Under the pieces are notes generated by a model. It searched no databases. It saw only the letters and a program-made list of their open reading frames with translations, and was not told where the DNA came from. Positions 1,467-33,212 of a DNA stretch of 64,000 bases are shown in pieces; the stretch's first letter is position 1, and the number at the start of each line of letters is the position of its first letter. The stretch lies in the NCBI GenBank assembly GCA_035084275.1, contig CM068761.1, positions 9,238,001 to 9,302,000 on the forward strand. Direction: 5' to 3'. Both the position numbers and the translations under genes were made by a program. The DNA comes from Hydrolagus colliei. Taxonomy: Eukaryota.

Positions 1467-1642
1467 AGAATCAATGTCACAGTGAAAACTGGTTTAACCA
1501 TGATGATTGCCGGCTCCATGGCCCCCTGTGTGCAGCTGGGCATTTCGGCCATTGGTGTGGTGGGCAGCGCAGAGCACAACAAGCAGCACAGTGCCAAGTT
1601 CTTTGAATTCCTTACCAAGGAGCTGGGCCTAACAGCAGACAG
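1467..1642 (+). CDS. DDT: D-dopachrome tautomerase (MIF family) exon 2; exon 1 lies upstream of the window
   Basis: After acceptor ttacag (1461-1466) it translates [58 protein letters not shown]+AG, closely matching vertebrate DDT (RVNVTV...[20 protein letters not shown]). 176 nt; donor AG|GCACGT (GC type). Confidence 0.93.
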
Positions 1643-1774
1643 GCACGTGTGAATATCATAGCACTAGCTTCACTCTTTCACTGATAATGATAATATACTA
1701 ATACACTCACCCTTTCCTCTCACCCTCACATTGTTTGATATAGAGTCTTATCAACAACAACTGCAACAAAATTA

Positions 1775-1960
1775 CATTTATAGAGCGCCTTTCACATCAG
1801 GAGGACATACCAAGTCTTCGAGACATCTCAAAGCGCTTCACAGAATAGACCATCAAGTGAATTGACTATATTTTGTGGGCGAAACGTGGCAGCCATTAAT
1901 GTACAGCATTGTCCCACAAACTGTCATTAATTCAGTGACAAAATTATTACTATTTATATT
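1775..1960 (-). mobile_element. 3' half of tRNA-derived SINE in DDT intron 2
   Basis: Matches the reverse complement of the SINE body and tail seen at 57015-57350 (ttgtgggcgaaa..gcagcca..tgtcccacaaac). Confidence 0.7.
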
Positions 1961-2164
1961 TTGGTTGAAGGGATTATTACCCCTGGAAAAGCCGACTGCC
2001 AAATGATTAATAACCGGGTTACTGCTAGGTAAACAGAGGCGTGTGGAACAAGGAAATCTGCCCATCGTTTTTAGCAAAATCTGTGTATCTGATAGGAACA
2101 TGACTTTATTCAGCCTCCCGACCCTATTTTGCCAGTTTATTAGATAATGGCAGATCTTTTAATC

Positions 2165-2305
2165 CCCTTTGAATCTGAAGCTGTGGGTTGAAGCCCCCAC
2201 ATCGGAAATTTGAGCCTTAGCTGACGCTGCAGTATAATGCCATAATGCTAAAAAGCCCATGACACTTTTTGAAAACAGAAGGGAGTTTCTTCTAGTGTCC
2301 TGGCC
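2165..2305 (+). mobile_element. DeuSINE/SacSINE1-like fragment
   Basis: Resembles the recalled shark DeuSINE consensus (gttgtgggttcaagtccc...cccatggcact...ggtgtcctggccaa) with an internal deletion; recalled, not aligned. Confidence 0.45.
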
Positions 2306-3592
2306 AACAACAACAATAACAATTTACATTTATAGAGCGCCTTTCACGTCCGGAGGACGTCCCAAGGCGCTGCACAGGAGGCGTGTGACCCGAGCTGGGA
2401 GGGGAGTGTTTGGGAAGGGGTGAAACACGAAGGGGAGGTAAAAGAGTTCGGGGTGGAATAAAAGTCACGATCGAAGAGGAAAGTCTTCGAACTGGCCTTG
2501 AAAGAGGAAAGGGAAGAGACGAAACAGAGGGATTGAGGGATGGCATTCCATAAGGTGGAGAAACAGAAGGCCCGGCCTCCGATGGTGGGACGGTTTGGGC
2601 GGGGAGCTTGGAGCAGGCCAAGTCCTGTTGAACGGAGGGTCCGGGTGGGCATGTAGGGGGAGAGTAGATCGATTGAGTAGGATGGGGCAAGGCCGTGTAA
2701 GGCCTTGTAGGTGAGGACGAGGATCTTAAACTCGATCCTCTGGAGGATGGGGAGCCAGTGGAGACGGGCGAGGGTGGGGGTTATGTGGTCACGGAGGCGG
2801 GTGCGGGATAGTACACGGGCTGCAGAGTTTTGGATGGCCTGCAGCCTATGAATGGAGGAACTGGGGAGGCCGACGAAGAGAGAATTTCCGTAGTCCAGCC
2901 GTGAGGTGATGTATGCATTCACGAGTGTTTCGGCAGCGCTGGGGGTAAGATAATTACGGAGCCTGGCAATGTTGCGCAGATGGAAATAGGCGGTGCCGGT
3001 CAAGGCACGGATGTGGGGGAGGAAGGAATGTTTTTGATCGAACATGATGCCGAGGTTCCTGATTGGCTTTGTGAGGTGGAGAGTGCAGCCTTGGATGTTG
3101 AGGCTGGCAGCGCCCGATGTGCGGAGGCGCTGGCTTGAGCCAATCAGGAGGGCCTCGGTCTTACTCACGTTCAATTGCAAAAGGTTGTCCCTCGTCCACG
3201 ACTCGATGTCGGACAGACATGCTGTCAGAACATCGATCGTCTGGGGGTTGAGGGATGAGGCAGAAAGGTACAACTGGGTGTCATACGCATACATGTGGAA
3301 ATTTACCCCATGTTTGCGGATGACGTCGCCCAGAGGGAGCGTGTAAAGGGTGAAAAGGAGGGGACCGAGGACAGAGGCCTGAGGGACGTCGTGAGAAACT
3401 GTGCGGGGGTTTGAAGAAAAACCATTGGAAGAAACAAAATGTAAACGGTGGGTCAAATAAGAGTGGAACCAGTCAAGGACTGTGCCTTGAAGGTTGAGGT
3501 GGGAGGAAAGACGTTGAAGGAGGATGGTGTGATCGACTGTGTTGAACGCAGCAGACAGGTCAAGGAGGACGAGGAGGCAGAGGGAGCCCTCC
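2306..3592 (-). mobile_element. L2 LINE, 5'-truncated, young family
   Basis: ORF 2344..3456 has the RT motif region ([45 protein letters not shown]) and a (CAA)n tail at about 2306-2320. Confidence 0.95.
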
Positions 3593-3828
3593 GGTTAAAG
3601 TTGGTGACTCTCTGCAAGGCTATTTGTGGGTTGTTGAGCTGTGCACCAAATTTGCTGGTGCGTTCACTTACAAAATACTAAATTACTAGATTCCTGGAAC
3701 TCAGACATTTTATCATGTTTGGGTATCTGAGTTTATAGACCACTGGGACTGGTTATTAAGGGGTTAACCTGTAAATAGCTTAATTGATGGGATGATGTTC
3801 TCTTTTGTTCTTTGACTTTGCTTTCTAG

Positions 3829-3892
3829 GATTTTGATCAGATTTTACTCCCTGGAACCTTGGCAGAACGCTACCGTCATGACCTTTCTATAG
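3829..3892 (+). CDS. DDT: D-dopachrome tautomerase terminal exon 3
   Basis: Polypyrimidine tract plus ctttctag acceptor (to 3828); translates (R)ILIRFYSLEPWQNATVMTFL* versus human [24 protein letters not shown]. Candidate AATAAA at 4457-4462. Confidence 0.92.
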
Positions 3893-4257
3893 AAATGTGG
3901 TTTCTGTTTGTTCCCTGGAAGGTGAGCTGTGACCAGATGCTGTGACCAATATATTAATAGAGAAGATACATTACACATTTAAAGGCATATCGCACCTTTC
4001 GAATTGGGAGGAGGACATCCCAACGTGCTGGGAAGATCTCAATCTTCAAGCTGATCTTTGGAATGTGATTCTTTGGATTGATGAGGGAATAATTATTTTC
4101 TGAGCCAATAGAAAAGTGCAGCCGTGATTCTCCCGTGCAATCCGCTGTAAATGGTGGCCTCCGTTACAAACCCACTACAACTATAGTGACTGGCCCCCAG
4201 CCTCTTCCCTTATGCCCACACGCATAAGTGTGGGCTTCACTCAGGCCCCACTGCTGT

Positions 4258-31018: not shown

Positions 31019-31184
31019 GCAAACTCAAACTACTCCACATTTTGATCTGAATTACAACAGCATCGAAATACAGACGGCGCGATACTGTGACACAGTTTGG
31101 CTCGTTATCAAAATGTGGGAATGTCGAATTGAACATTTCTCAACAAGCCTCCGTGGGCAGTACAGTTCAGTACAGTTCCCGGAA

Positions 31185-31507
31185 TCATACACAGGTGGAT
31201 CTGGCGATGGTTGTTTTAAGAGGATCTGCCCGAGTCTCGTGTTTGACCAGACAGGAATACAGCTCGTGTGACTCCCACTCGGAGGCTGGCAGAGTCAGAT
31301 AACTGCTCACACTGTACGTGTTGTCCACCTCCTGCTTGATCGCACTCGTTTCAACACCTTCACTTCTGGCACTGCCATCCACAGTCCACTTGACCTCCAC
31401 AGCTCCCGGGTTAAAATCATTCACCAGACACACCAGGGTCGCCTTGCTCTTTGCTGTGATTTGATCTGGTGACGGCGGAAGGACAGTCACCGAAGGGGCC
31501 CGTGGGT
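31185..31507 (-). CDS. IGL: Ig light-chain (lambda-type) constant exon, cluster 2
   Basis: Acceptor ttccag|AC; 323 nt; differs from the cluster 1 C at only 4 residues (M/R, E/K, I/N, T/K). Confidence 0.97.
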
Positions 31508-32550
31508 CTGGAAATAAAGATTCAGTTTTAAAAACATCTGCTGAGAACTTTATCATTTCTCTCTGATGGTTTAGCAATATAAAGTGCTCTCCTCTTCACT
31601 CCCAATTGATGCGAATCTGAAATTAATCTCGCCATGTTAACCTCCAATATATAATCCTATATACCGGGCACTGACGTTTCCGTGTTGTTCCAATTGAAAT
31701 GTGAATACAAATCTGTGCGGCTGATGTTCTGATAGATGTGGTTCTATTACAGCTGAATCATTAAGCTGTTTAGCACAAGCACGTTTATTTTATTCAAACA
31801 ATTTTTACGTCGAGATGACAATATATCGCTTAAATAGGCCAAAAAATACGGTTACGAAAGATTGTAGATTCCCTATCCAAATAAAATATTTCATGATCGA
31901 GAGGCGTGGGTTTGAACAAATATCCTGCAATAATATAATTTAATGACACCTGTTAACTGATCCGAAGGATACTACATAAATCAGAGGAAGTTGGGAAAAT
32001 GTTAATTTCAAACGCGTCGTTTTATGCCGAGCGATTTCAGCTCAGATTTGAACTCTCGGGGCAACTGTGATTGTTTTTGTGGATCTGGTTCTACAATCAT
32101 TCTGAACATTCAGTTCAAACCGATTGAGAATGAGTTAGAGTGATTAGGACTGGCTGCGATAGAATCTCCTTTCAGAATGTTGGGTCGCATCAAGATTCCT
32201 GAATAATAATAACAAAATTAGTTACAATACAACAGCATCTACATTTATGTCACTCCTTTTCGCGTCAGGAAAATTTCGCAAATTATGTGAAGAAGCGAAG
32301 TTGAACAAAAAATACATACGTGTGCCCCACACTGCCCGCCTCGCCTCACCACACACACTCACTCACATAGATCATTTTGATTCAAGTGGTACAATAGTAT
32401 TCTCAGCACAGCTCATTAAAATATACACTCATGATATGACAACCGTTATGAATAAGGTCAGAATAGAATAAGAATAGAGCTCAACATAAAACACAGCAAC
32501 AGCTAAACTATTGCTCAATTTAATCTGTAACAAATCACAATTATACTTAC

Positions 32551-32895
32551 TGGCAATCCCCACTCTGGTCCCTTTACCGAAGAATAAGCCCGATTCCCAC
32601 ACAGCACAGTAATAATCAGCGGCGTCATCCCCCTGAACACTGGAGATGATTAAATCGCCAGACCTGGAATCCCTGGAGCCCGAGAATCGATCGGAAACTC
32701 CCGACATCCTGGTGAAGCTGTTCACTCCATTAGTGTACAGGAGATACTGAGGAGCATTCCCCGGCCTTTGCTGGTACCAATACACAGCATAGCTGCTAAT
32801 ACTGCCCCCAGTCATGGTACAACCCAGGGTCAACTTCTCTCCCAGGGAGGTAGAGACCGACGGCGGCTGATGTAAGGCTGGCAGCGAGTTTACAC
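32551..32895 (-). CDS. IGL: Germline-joined VJ exon, cluster 2 (divergent V family)
   Basis: Acceptor ttacag; VNSLPALHQPPSVSTSLGEKLTLGCTMTGGSISSYAVYWYQQRPGNAPQYLLYTNGVNSFTRMSGVSDRFSGS...DAADYYC-AVWESGLF-FGKGTRVGIA; donor gtaagt (32545-32550); no RSS. Confidence 0.96.
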
Positions 32896-33030
32896 CTGTA
32901 AAACAGTAAGTCAGGAGAACACATAACAATACATGATGATTCTCAAATAACAGGCAAATCAAAGCTCTCAGCCCATGTACCCAACACAAGAACAAGGAAC
33001 TGGAGCAATAATAATCCCTGAAGGACTCAC

Positions 33031-33079
33031 AGTGGAGGCAAGTCATCAATGTGGCGAGAAATGGAACCCAAGGCGCCAT
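33031..33079 (-). CDS. IGL: Leader exon, IgL cluster 2
   Basis: MAPWVPFLATLMTCLH+T then gtgagt donor; 49 nt, phase matches the VJ exon. Confidence 0.92.
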
Positions 33080-33204
33080 GGTGAGGGTTACGGGATCGGT
33101 CACAAATTCCAACCGTTTCCTGACAACAACTGACTCTGGGTATCAGCCCGTGGCTCAGTTTATGAACTGACCCAATTCTGAACGTCACACGGCGCTGATC
33201 AGTT

Positions 33205-33212
33205 ATGCAAAT
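33205..33212 (-). promoter_or_regulatory. Ig octamer in the V2 promoter
   Basis: ATGCAAAT on + (ATTTGCAT on the coding strand) about 126 nt upstream of the ATG. Confidence 0.88.

What the first reader, a model, noticed from the sequence alone, without database searches (positions are those of the whole stretch)
1467..33212. DDT directly adjacent to lambda-type Ig light-chain clusters: possible ancient DDT-IGL linkage
Seen: the DDT stop codon lies about 11 kb from the first IgL C exon with no other gene between them. Established: human DDT/MIF/GSTT (22q11.23) lie next to the IGL locus and IGLL1 (22q11.22-23). Inference: this is the ancestral jawed-vertebrate lambda locus neighbourhood, which would anchor orthology of cartilaginous-fish type II/lambda clusters to tetrapod IGL by synteny rather than by sequence alone.
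Basis: partly seen in the sequence, partly recalled or inferred. Interest (0 to 1): 0.7.

Follow-up and report, generated by a model that had tools for sequence, protein, structure and literature searches.

The report
DDT gene abutting lambda light-chain clusters
In a ratfish-like (chimaera) genome the 3' end of the DDT gene sits 11 kb from two ready-joined lambda-type antibody light-chain genes. Other cartilaginous fishes keep DDT and lambda genes on one chromosome but millions of bases apart, so the tight adjacency is a local rearrangement, not an ancestral arrangement.

Summary
DDT exons 2 and 3 lie at 1467-1642 and 3829-3892 on the + strand. Two intact, germline-joined type II/lambda IgL miniclusters lie on the - strand (leader-VJ-C at 18642-15008 and 33079-31185). 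The DDT stop and the first C-exon stop are 11.1 kb apart, with only LINE/SINE debris between them.

- **Linkage holds at chromosome scale.** DDT and lambda-like genes share one chromosome-scale contig in eight other chondrichthyans.
- **Adjacency does not hold.** In the four species with coordinates they are 1.8-8.5 Mb apart, and none has an Ig exon within 10 kb of DDT.
- **The window is a mosaic relative to Callorhinchus.** The DDT block ends at 5453, the lambda repeat unit starts at 5483 with a SINE at the junction, and 44375-64000 is the HES5 upstream block.
- **The conserved close neighbour of lambda is HES5-like,** a gene I recall as lying on human 1p36, not 22q11.

The kb-scale adjacency is therefore most likely derived in the chimaerid lineage. 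Mb-scale DDT-lambda linkage is old within cartilaginous fishes and consistent with tetrapod 22q11-type synteny, but it is weak as an orthology anchor. I found no paper stating this linkage. Interest is modest.

The parts
1467..1642 (+). DDT exon 2 (176 nt, phase 0 to 2); GC splice donor at 1643-1644
   Evidence: Pfam MIF E=2.7e-22. The same CAG|GCACGT donor occurs in Callorhinchus DDT.
2305..3590 (-). LINE reverse-transcriptase fragment inserted in DDT intron 2
   Evidence: RVT_1 E=2.3e-15. Absent from Callorhinchus intron 2, where L001 13705/13707 maps to window 2310/3588. Copies lie at 21155-22212 and 49189-50475.
3829..3892 (+). DDT exon 3 with stop TAG at 3890-3892, encoding ILIRFYSLEPWQNATVMTFL
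   Evidence: Three residues shorter than Callorhinchus ...WQIGKNGTVMTFL.
3893..5453 (+). DDT 3' UTR and downstream flank, orthologous to the Callorhinchus DDT flank; AATAAA at 4457
   Evidence: blastn L001 13707-15513 to window 3588-5453, 73% identity; homology stops at 5453. PolyA motif scan.
5454..5640 (.). SINE-like repeat at the junction between the DDT block and the lambda unit
   Evidence: Matches dispersed copies in L001. The lambda-unit duplication begins inside it at 5483/22619. The right end is approximate.
5483..15346 (-). 3' flank plus C exon of lambda unit 1, a segmental duplicate of 22619-31522 (82-96% identity)
   Evidence: Self-blastn. ORFs give only RVT_1 fragments or nothing.
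15008..15330 (-). C-lambda exon of cluster 1 (stop TGA at 15010-15008)
   Evidence: C1-set E=5e-27. 47.6% identical to human IGLC2 against 39% to IGKC. Model verified.
18088..18435 (-). Germline-joined VJ exon of cluster 1 (…YYCGARLRSSPYTFLFGKGTKLNLK, then donor GTAAGT); no RSS
   Evidence: The CDR3-J is identical to H. colliei AAA59371.
18594..18642 (-). Leader exon of cluster 1
18743..18777 (-). Two ATTTGCAT octamers (18777-18770 and 18750-18743) about 100-135 bp upstream of the ATG
   Evidence: Read directly from the sequence.
22619..31522 (-). 3' flank plus C exon of lambda unit 2 (duplicate of 5483-15346)
31185..31507 (-). C-lambda exon of cluster 2 (316/323 nt identical to cluster 1)
32551..32895 (-). 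Germline-joined VJ exon of cluster 2, a different V family (about 47% aa identity to V1)
   Evidence: The whole chain is 95% identical to H. colliei AAA59369.
33031..33079 (-). Leader exon of cluster 2
33205..33212 (-). Octamer ATTTGCAT of the cluster 2 promoter
44375..64000 (+). Block orthologous to the Callorhinchus HES5 upstream region and HES5 gene. HES5 exons are 62487-62561, 62697-62877 and 63000-63241.
   Evidence: blastn L006 27-11434 to window 44375-63999. HES5 protein is 89% identical to Callorhinchus HES-5. Model verified.

Best explanation
The window comes from a chimaerid holocephalan, Hydrolagus colliei or a close relative. It holds the 3' two-thirds of an orthologous DDT gene. 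Tail-to-tail against it sit the last two units of a lambda (type II) light-chain minicluster array.

Each unit is a self-contained gene: octamer promoter, leader, a V exon already fused to J in the germline, an intron, one C exon, and about 10 kb of TE-rich 3' flank. Such units are transcribed without RAG rearrangement. The units arose by tandem segmental duplication.

DDT and the lambda array were already on the same chromosome in the chondrichthyan ancestor, a few Mb apart, with a HES5-like gene next to the array. In the lineage leading to this species a rearrangement placed the DDT block directly against the end of a lambda unit. The breakpoint lies at a SINE just 3' of DDT (5453/5483).

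- **Shown:** the gene models, the germline joining, the duplication, the block boundaries, and the distances in four other species.
- **Inferred:** the direction of change (gain in chimaerids), the type of rearrangement, and the homology of the Mb-scale linkage with tetrapod 22q11.
For: - **Gene models** splice cleanly into open reading frames.
- **Family assignments:** DDT 83% to Callorhinchus DDT; lambda proteins 95% to H. colliei light chains and 56-66% to sandbar-shark lambda.
- **Germline joining:** VJ is contiguous with a GTAAGT donor. [quoted passage not shown]
- **Duplication:** 5483-15346 matches 22619-31522.
- **Left block:** collinearity with Callorhinchus DDT stops at 5453.
- **Right block:** 44375-63999 is collinear with Callorhinchus HES5 at 2.55 Mb.
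- **Cluster 1:** 19880-15019 is collinear with Callorhinchus lambda clusters.
- **Coordinates elsewhere:**
  - Callorhinchus: DDT 1.06 Mb, HES5 2.55 Mb, lambda 2.90-3.09 Mb.
  - Heterodontus: lambda 54.90-55.96 Mb, HES5 56.06 Mb, DDT 63.37 Mb.
  - Leucoraja: DDT 20.05 Mb, lambda 22.43 Mb.
  - Heptranchias: DDT 4.0 Mb, lambda 9.1 Mb.
- **No Ig exon within 10 kb of DDT** in those four species.
- **Shared orientation:** the lambda(-)/HES5(+) order and orientation of the window matches Heterodontus.
Against: - Only one to two lambda clusters per species were located, so unlisted clusters could lie closer to DDT than measured, though not within 10 kb.
- Gene content between DDT and the arrays in other species could not be read. 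It is therefore untested whether the Mb-scale linkage reflects a 22q11-type block.
- The nearest conserved neighbour, HES5, is human 1p36 from memory.
- DDT(+)-lambda(-)-HES5(+) cannot be derived from lambda(-)-HES5(+)-DDT(+) by one inversion. A transposition or several steps are needed.
- No second chimaerid genome and no reads were available to confirm the junction.
Confidence: 0.65

Rival explanations
1. One reading: tight DDT-lambda adjacency is the ancestral jawed-vertebrate condition. It is retained in this chimaera and was secondarily pulled apart in Callorhinchus, elasmobranchs and tetrapods.
For: DDT and lambda are on one chromosome in every chondrichthyan checked and in tetrapods (PMC9614664). 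The DDT block abuts a complete lambda unit, not a fragment of one.
Against: It needs at least two independent separations (Callorhinchus and the elasmobranch stem) against one gain. Four of four other species have no Ig exon within 10 kb of DDT and lie 1.8-8.5 Mb away. The junction lies at a SINE, and the flank orthologous to Callorhinchus ends abruptly at 5453. In Callorhinchus the downstream neighbour of DDT is a non-Ig gene (PF15874) less than 3 kb away.
Confidence: 0.1
2. There is no ancient linkage. Lambda miniclusters are mobile, and their presence on the DDT chromosome of chondrichthyans is independent of the tetrapod IGL-MIF/DDT linkage (a chance coincidence or a chromosome fusion).
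For: The closest conserved neighbour of the array is HES5-like, not a 22q11 gene. In Gavialis, DDT and HES5-like sit on different contigs. True lambda of sterlet and gar is reported next to IFT81, not MIF/DDT (PMC5985310). Some elasmobranch IgL clusters lie near TCR alpha/delta-IgH (PMC12227049).
Against: All lambda-like proteins listed for each species map to a single contig length, and that contig also carries DDT in eight species. Chance co-location of two loci on one of several dozen chromosomes is only a few percent (my rough estimate). From memory, IFT81 and IGL/DDT share chicken chromosome 15, which would reconcile the fish data. This was not tested.
Confidence: 0.15
3. Assembly artefact: a chimeric join at the SINE (5454-5640) falsely places the DDT contig next to a lambda unit.
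For: The junction coincides with a dispersed repeat, and the region is rich in near-identical LINE/SINE copies and a 10-kb duplication.
Against: There is no N at the junction. The only gap is at 45400-45659, and its two sides are collinear with one Callorhinchus locus. The SINE is under 200 bp, too short to mislead a long-read assembly that resolved 10-kb duplicates at 82-96% identity.
Confidence: 0.05

Closest known systems
Type II (lambda, NS3) germline-joined light-chain miniclusters of cartilaginous fish (sandbar shark lambda, Hohman et al. 1993, PMC47676; Hydrolagus colliei light chains AAA59368-AAA59371)
   Same: L-VJ-C cluster within 3.6 kb or less, V fused to J in the germline, and an octamer promoter. 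95% protein identity to the H. colliei entries, including an identical CDR3-J, and 56-66% to sandbar-shark lambda. The same contiguous VJ is seen in Callorhinchus, Heterodontus, Leucoraja and Heptranchias clusters.
   Different: Nothing essential. The repeat unit here is about 16 kb, against about 12.3 kb in Callorhinchus. Two very different V families share nearly identical C exons.
Tetrapod IGL neighbourhood (human 22q11.22-23: TOP3B ... IGL ... IGLL1/VPREB3, C22orf15, CHCHD10, MMP11, SMARCB1, DERL3, SLC2A11, MIF, DDT)
   Same: DDT and lambda genes lie on one chromosome within Mb range. MIF and TOP3B are used as synteny anchors around IgL across tetrapods (PMC9614664). In Callorhinchus, DDT is flanked by a PF15874 gene (the family of human C22orf15, from memory) and a Kelch-BTB gene.
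   Different: In tetrapods many genes separate DDT from IGL, whereas here none do. No other 22q11 orthologue is in the window. The conserved neighbour of the chondrichthyan array is HES5-like. IGL is a translocon in tetrapods and a set of miniclusters here.
Callorhinchus milii scaffold MU249839.1 (DDT 1.06 Mb, HES5 2.55 Mb, lambda array 2.90-3.09 Mb)
   Same: The same three blocks occur on one chromosome. Each block is collinear at DNA level with part of the window.
   Different: Order and spacing differ: lambda-HES5-DDT over 2 Mb there, against DDT-lambda-HES5 within 60 kb here. The lambda orientation relative to HES5 is inverted in Callorhinchus.

Membership tests
Cartilaginous-fish type II / lambda IgL minicluster | One leader, one V(J) and one C exon as a compact cassette with its own promoter | tested here: met
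   Cluster 1 spans 18777-15008 and cluster 2 spans 33212-31185. Octamers are present, splice sites are canonical and the ORFs are open.
Cartilaginous-fish type II / lambda IgL minicluster | V and J fused in the germline (no RSS, no V-J intron) | tested here: met
   The reading frame is continuous from FR1 through FGKGT..., followed by GTAAGT. The literature rule is in PMC5192425.
Cartilaginous-fish type II / lambda IgL minicluster | Sequence affinity to reference type II/lambda chains rather than other isotypes | tested here: met
   56-66% identical to sandbar-shark lambda and 95% to H. colliei light chains. No chondrichthyan kappa, sigma or sigma-2 references were available for a tree.
Cartilaginous-fish type II / lambda IgL minicluster | Expressed as light-chain protein | not testable with these tools
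   Indirect only: GenBank H. colliei light-chain proteins carry the same CDR3-J as cluster 1.
DDT (D-dopachrome tautomerase/decarboxylase, MIF superfamily) | MIF-fold domain, with DDT rather than MIF as nearest relatives | tested here: met
   PF01187 E=2.7e-22. Every named protein among the 20 hits is annotated D-dopachrome decarboxylase (two are unnamed); the best is Callorhinchus at 83%.
DDT (D-dopachrome tautomerase/decarboxylase, MIF superfamily) | Orthologous position and gene structure | tested here: met
   Introns, exons and 1.5 kb of 3' flank are collinear with Callorhinchus DDT, and the rare GC donor is shared.
DDT (D-dopachrome tautomerase/decarboxylase, MIF superfamily) | Exon 1 with the N-terminal catalytic proline; complete ORF | not testable with these tools
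   Exon 1 lies left of the window. The source genome is not in the protein collection (best hit 83%).
Conserved 22q11-type IGL neighbourhood | DDT and lambda on the same chromosome in other chondrichthyans | tested here: met
Four of these are confirmed by record name and coordinates.
Conserved 22q11-type IGL neighbourhood | kb-scale DDT-IgL adjacency shared by other species | tested here: not met
   None of four species has an Ig exon within 10 kb of DDT. Distances are 1.8-8.5 Mb.
Conserved 22q11-type IGL neighbourhood | Other 22q11 orthologues beside the lambda clusters | tested here: not met
   Within the window the only other conserved gene is HES5, plus an isolated lectin-like exon. Flanks of 10 kb around six lambda loci in other species hold only Ig genes.
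Conserved 22q11-type IGL neighbourhood | 22q11 orthologues around DDT in chondrichthyans | tested here: inconclusive
   Callorhinchus DDT is flanked by a 629-aa BTB-Kelch gene and a 150-aa PF15874 gene. Equating these with KLHL22 and C22orf15 rests on memory.
Conserved 22q11-type IGL neighbourhood | The same linkage in bony vertebrates outside mammals | not tested
   Literature only: tetrapod MIF...IgL...TOP3B block (PMC9614664); sterlet and gar lambda next to IFT81 (PMC5985310).

The most novel reading that the evidence does not exclude
The chimaerid arrangement preserves a primordial tight MIF/DDT-lambda adjacency. On this reading the lambda light-chain locus originated right beside DDT, and all other lineages later inserted or rearranged DNA between them. 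This would give a base-pair-level synteny anchor for lambda orthology across jawed vertebrates.
Probability: 0.1. Interest if true: 0.6.

Novelty: new member of a known kind. Interest (0 to 1): 0.3.

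Why it matters
Orthology of light-chain isotypes between cartilaginous fish and tetrapods rests mainly on sequence trees. A recent paper states that the genomic distribution of chondrichthyan Ig miniclusters 'is not well known' (PMC12227049).

Two results add a modest, independent line of evidence for a single old lambda locus. All lambda clusters listed for each species sit on one chromosome. That chromosome also carries DDT, and in Callorhinchus it carries likely 22q11 neighbours as well.

There is also a caution. One striking adjacency in one genome can be a recent rearrangement, and the real conserved neighbour (HES5-like) points to a different human chromosome.

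Tried and rejected
- **tblastx of the Callorhinchus DDT locus against the window.** It was swamped by LINE/SINE hits and uninformative. I replaced it with filtered tblastn and blastn.
- **PDB sequence searches with the C and V domains to separate lambda from kappa.** The ranking was dominated by multi-domain chains, so I used direct pairwise comparison instead.
- **A complete C-type lectin gene around 48.5 kb.** Only one exon-like ORF with a sub-threshold Lectin_C hit was found. It has no counterpart in the orthologous Callorhinchus or Heterodontus DNA, so I treated it as an isolated fragment.
- **A C22orf15-like gene in the window,** searched with ORFs from the Callorhinchus locus. Only TE matches and the collinear DDT flank appeared.
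- **Literature searches for a published DDT/MIF-lambda linkage in cartilaginous fish.** Nothing was found. Two key papers were not held.

Full report
**What is in the window**

The 64-kb window has 43% G+C and one 260-N gap at 45400-45659. I did not fill that gap.

DDT lies on the + strand at the left end.
- Exon 2 is 1467-1642, with acceptor AG and an unusual GC donor (CAG|GCACGT).
- Exon 3 is 3829-3892, with stop TAG at 3890-3892.
- The spliced 79-residue product hits Pfam MIF (E=2.7e-22).
- All its named database relatives are D-dopachrome decarboxylases. The best is Callorhinchus milii at 83%, then sharks and rays at 66-77%.
- Exon 1 is outside the window.
- Intron 2 carries a LINE reverse-transcriptase fragment (2305-3590) that Callorhinchus lacks.

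**The two light-chain clusters**

Both lie on the - strand.

| Part | Cluster 1 | Cluster 2 |
|---|---|---|
| Octamer(s) ATTTGCAT | 18777-18770 and 18750-18743 | 33212-33205 |
| Leader | 18642-18594 | 33079-33031 |
| VJ exon | 18435-18088 | 32895-32551 |
| C exon | 15330-15008 | 31507-31185 |

- In both, the V frame runs straight into a J motif (FGKGTKLNLK in cluster 1, FGKGTRVGIA in cluster 2), followed by GTAAGT. V and J are therefore joined in the germline with no RSS.
- Splicing gives open 239-aa and 238-aa chains with V-set and C1-set domains.
- Cluster 1 is 95.4% identical to Hydrolagus colliei light chain AAA59371, including the whole CDR3-J. Cluster 2 is 95.0% identical to AAA59369.
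- Both are 56-66% identical to sandbar-shark lambda, the type II reference.
- The C domain is 47.6% identical to human C-lambda against 39% to C-kappa. The V domains score higher against human V-lambda than V-kappa.
- This fits the published rule that lambda (type II) genes are germline-joined in all cartilaginous fishes studied (PMC5192425).

The source is therefore a chimaerid, H. colliei or a close relative. The clusters themselves are a known kind.

**The interval between DDT and the first C exon**

- The two stops are 11.1 kb apart and the genes are convergent.
- The ten ORFs I scanned there (109-416 aa) give only RVT_1 fragments or no Pfam hit. Rfam finds nothing in the interval. 'No other gene between them' therefore holds.
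- The interval has structure. 5483-15346 is duplicated at 22619-31522 at 82-96% identity, so it is the 3' flank of the lambda repeat unit.
- Collinear homology with the Callorhinchus DDT locus covers 353-1692, 1814-2310 and 3588-5453, and stops at 5453.
- A SINE-like element occupies 5454 to about 5640, and the lambda-unit homology begins inside it at 5483.
- The DDT block and the lambda unit therefore meet at a sharp, repeat-associated junction.

**The right side of the window**

- 33.3-44.3 kb is LINE/SINE material with endonuclease and RT ORFs and tRNA-like SINE heads.
- 44375-63999 is collinear with the 10 kb upstream of Callorhinchus HES5 plus the HES5 gene itself.
- The window's HES5 has exons 62487-62561, 62697-62877 and 63000-63241. 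It carries bHLH, Orange and WRPW features and is 89% identical to Callorhinchus HES-5.
- A single lectin-like exon (48474-48620, sub-threshold Lectin_C) has no counterpart in Callorhinchus or Heterodontus.

**Comparison with other species**

In every species with a chromosome-scale assembly, all listed lambda-like proteins share a single contig length.

| Species (record) | DDT | HES5-like | Lambda clusters |
|---|---|---|---|
| Callorhinchus (MU249839.1) | 1.06 Mb | 2.55 Mb | 2.90-2.92 and 3.07-3.09 Mb |
| Heterodontus (CM071058.1) | 63.37 Mb | 56.06 Mb | 54.90 and 55.95 Mb |
| Leucoraja (CM054031.1) | 20.05 Mb | not located | 22.43 Mb |
| Heptranchias (CM068661.1) | 4.0 Mb | not located | 9.1 Mb |

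- None of the four has a V or C exon within 10 kb of DDT.
- In Callorhinchus the neighbours of DDT are a BTB-Kelch gene and a 150-aa PF15874 gene. From memory these correspond to KLHL22 and C22orf15, both on human 22q11. I did not verify that.
- HES5-like shares the lambda contig in about twelve species.
- The lambda(-)/HES5(+) arrangement of the window matches Heterodontus.

**Interpretation**

- The simplest history is as follows. The chondrichthyan ancestor had lambda array, HES5-like, a few Mb, then DDT on one chromosome. The lineage of this chimaera moved the DDT block against the end of a lambda unit. One gain is more parsimonious than losses in both Callorhinchus and elasmobranchs.
- The rearrangement is not a single inversion. 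The order and orientations differ in a way that needs a transposition or several steps.
- The Mb-scale linkage is compatible with the tetrapod block in which MIF, DDT and TOP3B bracket IgL (PMC9614664). It may therefore be ancient.
- It is a weak anchor, for three reasons:
  - HES5 is closer to the array, and I recall it as lying on human 1p36.
  - True lambda of sterlet and gar is reported next to IFT81 (PMC5985310).
  - I could not read the genes lying between DDT and the arrays.

**Novelty**

I found no paper that states a DDT-lambda linkage in cartilaginous fish. A 2025 paper says the genomic distribution of these miniclusters is not well known, and reports some IgL near the TCR alpha/delta-IgH region (PMC12227049). 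The linkage is thus a small new observation of a familiar type, conserved macrosynteny. The clusters and DDT themselves are ordinary.

**Caveats**

- Only one or two lambda loci per species were located.
It was confirmed by record names in four species.
- The junction could not be checked against reads.
- The human chromosome assignments of HES5, KLHL22, C22orf15 and IFT81 come from memory.

Noticed in passing
window 1643-1648; L001 13123-13128: DDT intron 2 uses a GC donor (CAG|GCACGT). The identical donor is present in Callorhinchus, whereas Heterodontus has a standard GTAAGT. The GC-AG intron is apparently specific to holocephalans.
   Followed up: partly
window 3860-3892: The DDT C-terminus is three residues shorter than in Callorhinchus and other vertebrates (WQNATVMTFL against WQIGKNGTVMTFL). 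This is an in-frame 9-nt difference that creates an N-A-T sequon. Its functional meaning is unknown.
   Followed up: no
window 13788-15346 vs 29969-31522: The C exon plus about 1.2 kb of its 3' flank are 96% identical between the two clusters, whereas the rest of the duplicated flank is 82-87% identical. The V exons belong to different families (about 47% aa identity). This suggests gene conversion or recent homogenisation around C.
   Followed up: partly
window 18456-18538: A 16-bp tandem repeat (5.2 copies, 94% matches) lies in the leader-V intron of cluster 1. On the coding strand each unit contains TACAGTG, one mismatch from the RSS heptamer CACAGTG. It may be chance.
   Followed up: no
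window 13788-13839 and 29934-30020: A 20-bp tandem repeat (GCCCAATGAGGCGAGAACCC) lies 3' of both C exons, with 2.6 and 4.3 copies respectively.
   Followed up: no
window 48474-48620: An isolated exon-like ORF has a C-type lectin start (sub-threshold Lectin_C, E=0.0019). It lies in a stretch (47157-48607) with no counterpart in the otherwise collinear Callorhinchus HES5 upstream region. No further lectin exons were identified.
   Followed up: partly
window 62386-63241; L006; L007: An intact three-exon HES5 orthologue with a TATA box (about 62386) and a WRPW end. A HES5-like gene lies 0.1 Mb from lambda in Heterodontus and 0.35 Mb from lambda in Callorhinchus. In Chiloscyllium punctatum it is 17 locus tags away (chiPu_0007073 against chiPu_0007090/91). 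It shares the lambda contig in about twelve chondrichthyans.
   Followed up: partly
L003, L005 (Callorhinchus MU249839.1, 2.90-3.09 Mb): The Callorhinchus lambda clusters located here (2.90-2.92 and 3.07-3.09 Mb) are about 12.3 kb apart, all germline-joined, and all on the same strand as HES5. That is the opposite orientation to the window and to the Heterodontus cluster nearest HES5. Heterodontus itself has clusters in both orientations.
   Followed up: partly
window 35407-35477 (-), 47244-47315 (+), and copies near 34.0, 50.8, 57.0, 58.1-58.4, 60.6 kb: A tRNA-derived SINE family of about 320 bp is scattered through the window and through Callorhinchus loci. Two copies still pass the Rfam tRNA threshold.
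   Followed up: no
window 36467-38988 (-): A LINE with long open endonuclease and reverse-transcriptase reading frames (Exo_endo_phos E=2.7e-14, RVT_1 E=3.7e-16) looks comparatively young.
   Followed up: no
window 45400-45659: The only N run. Its two flanks (44375-44781 and 45663-47157) are collinear with one Callorhinchus locus, so the scaffold join looks correct. The gap was not filled.
   Followed up: yes
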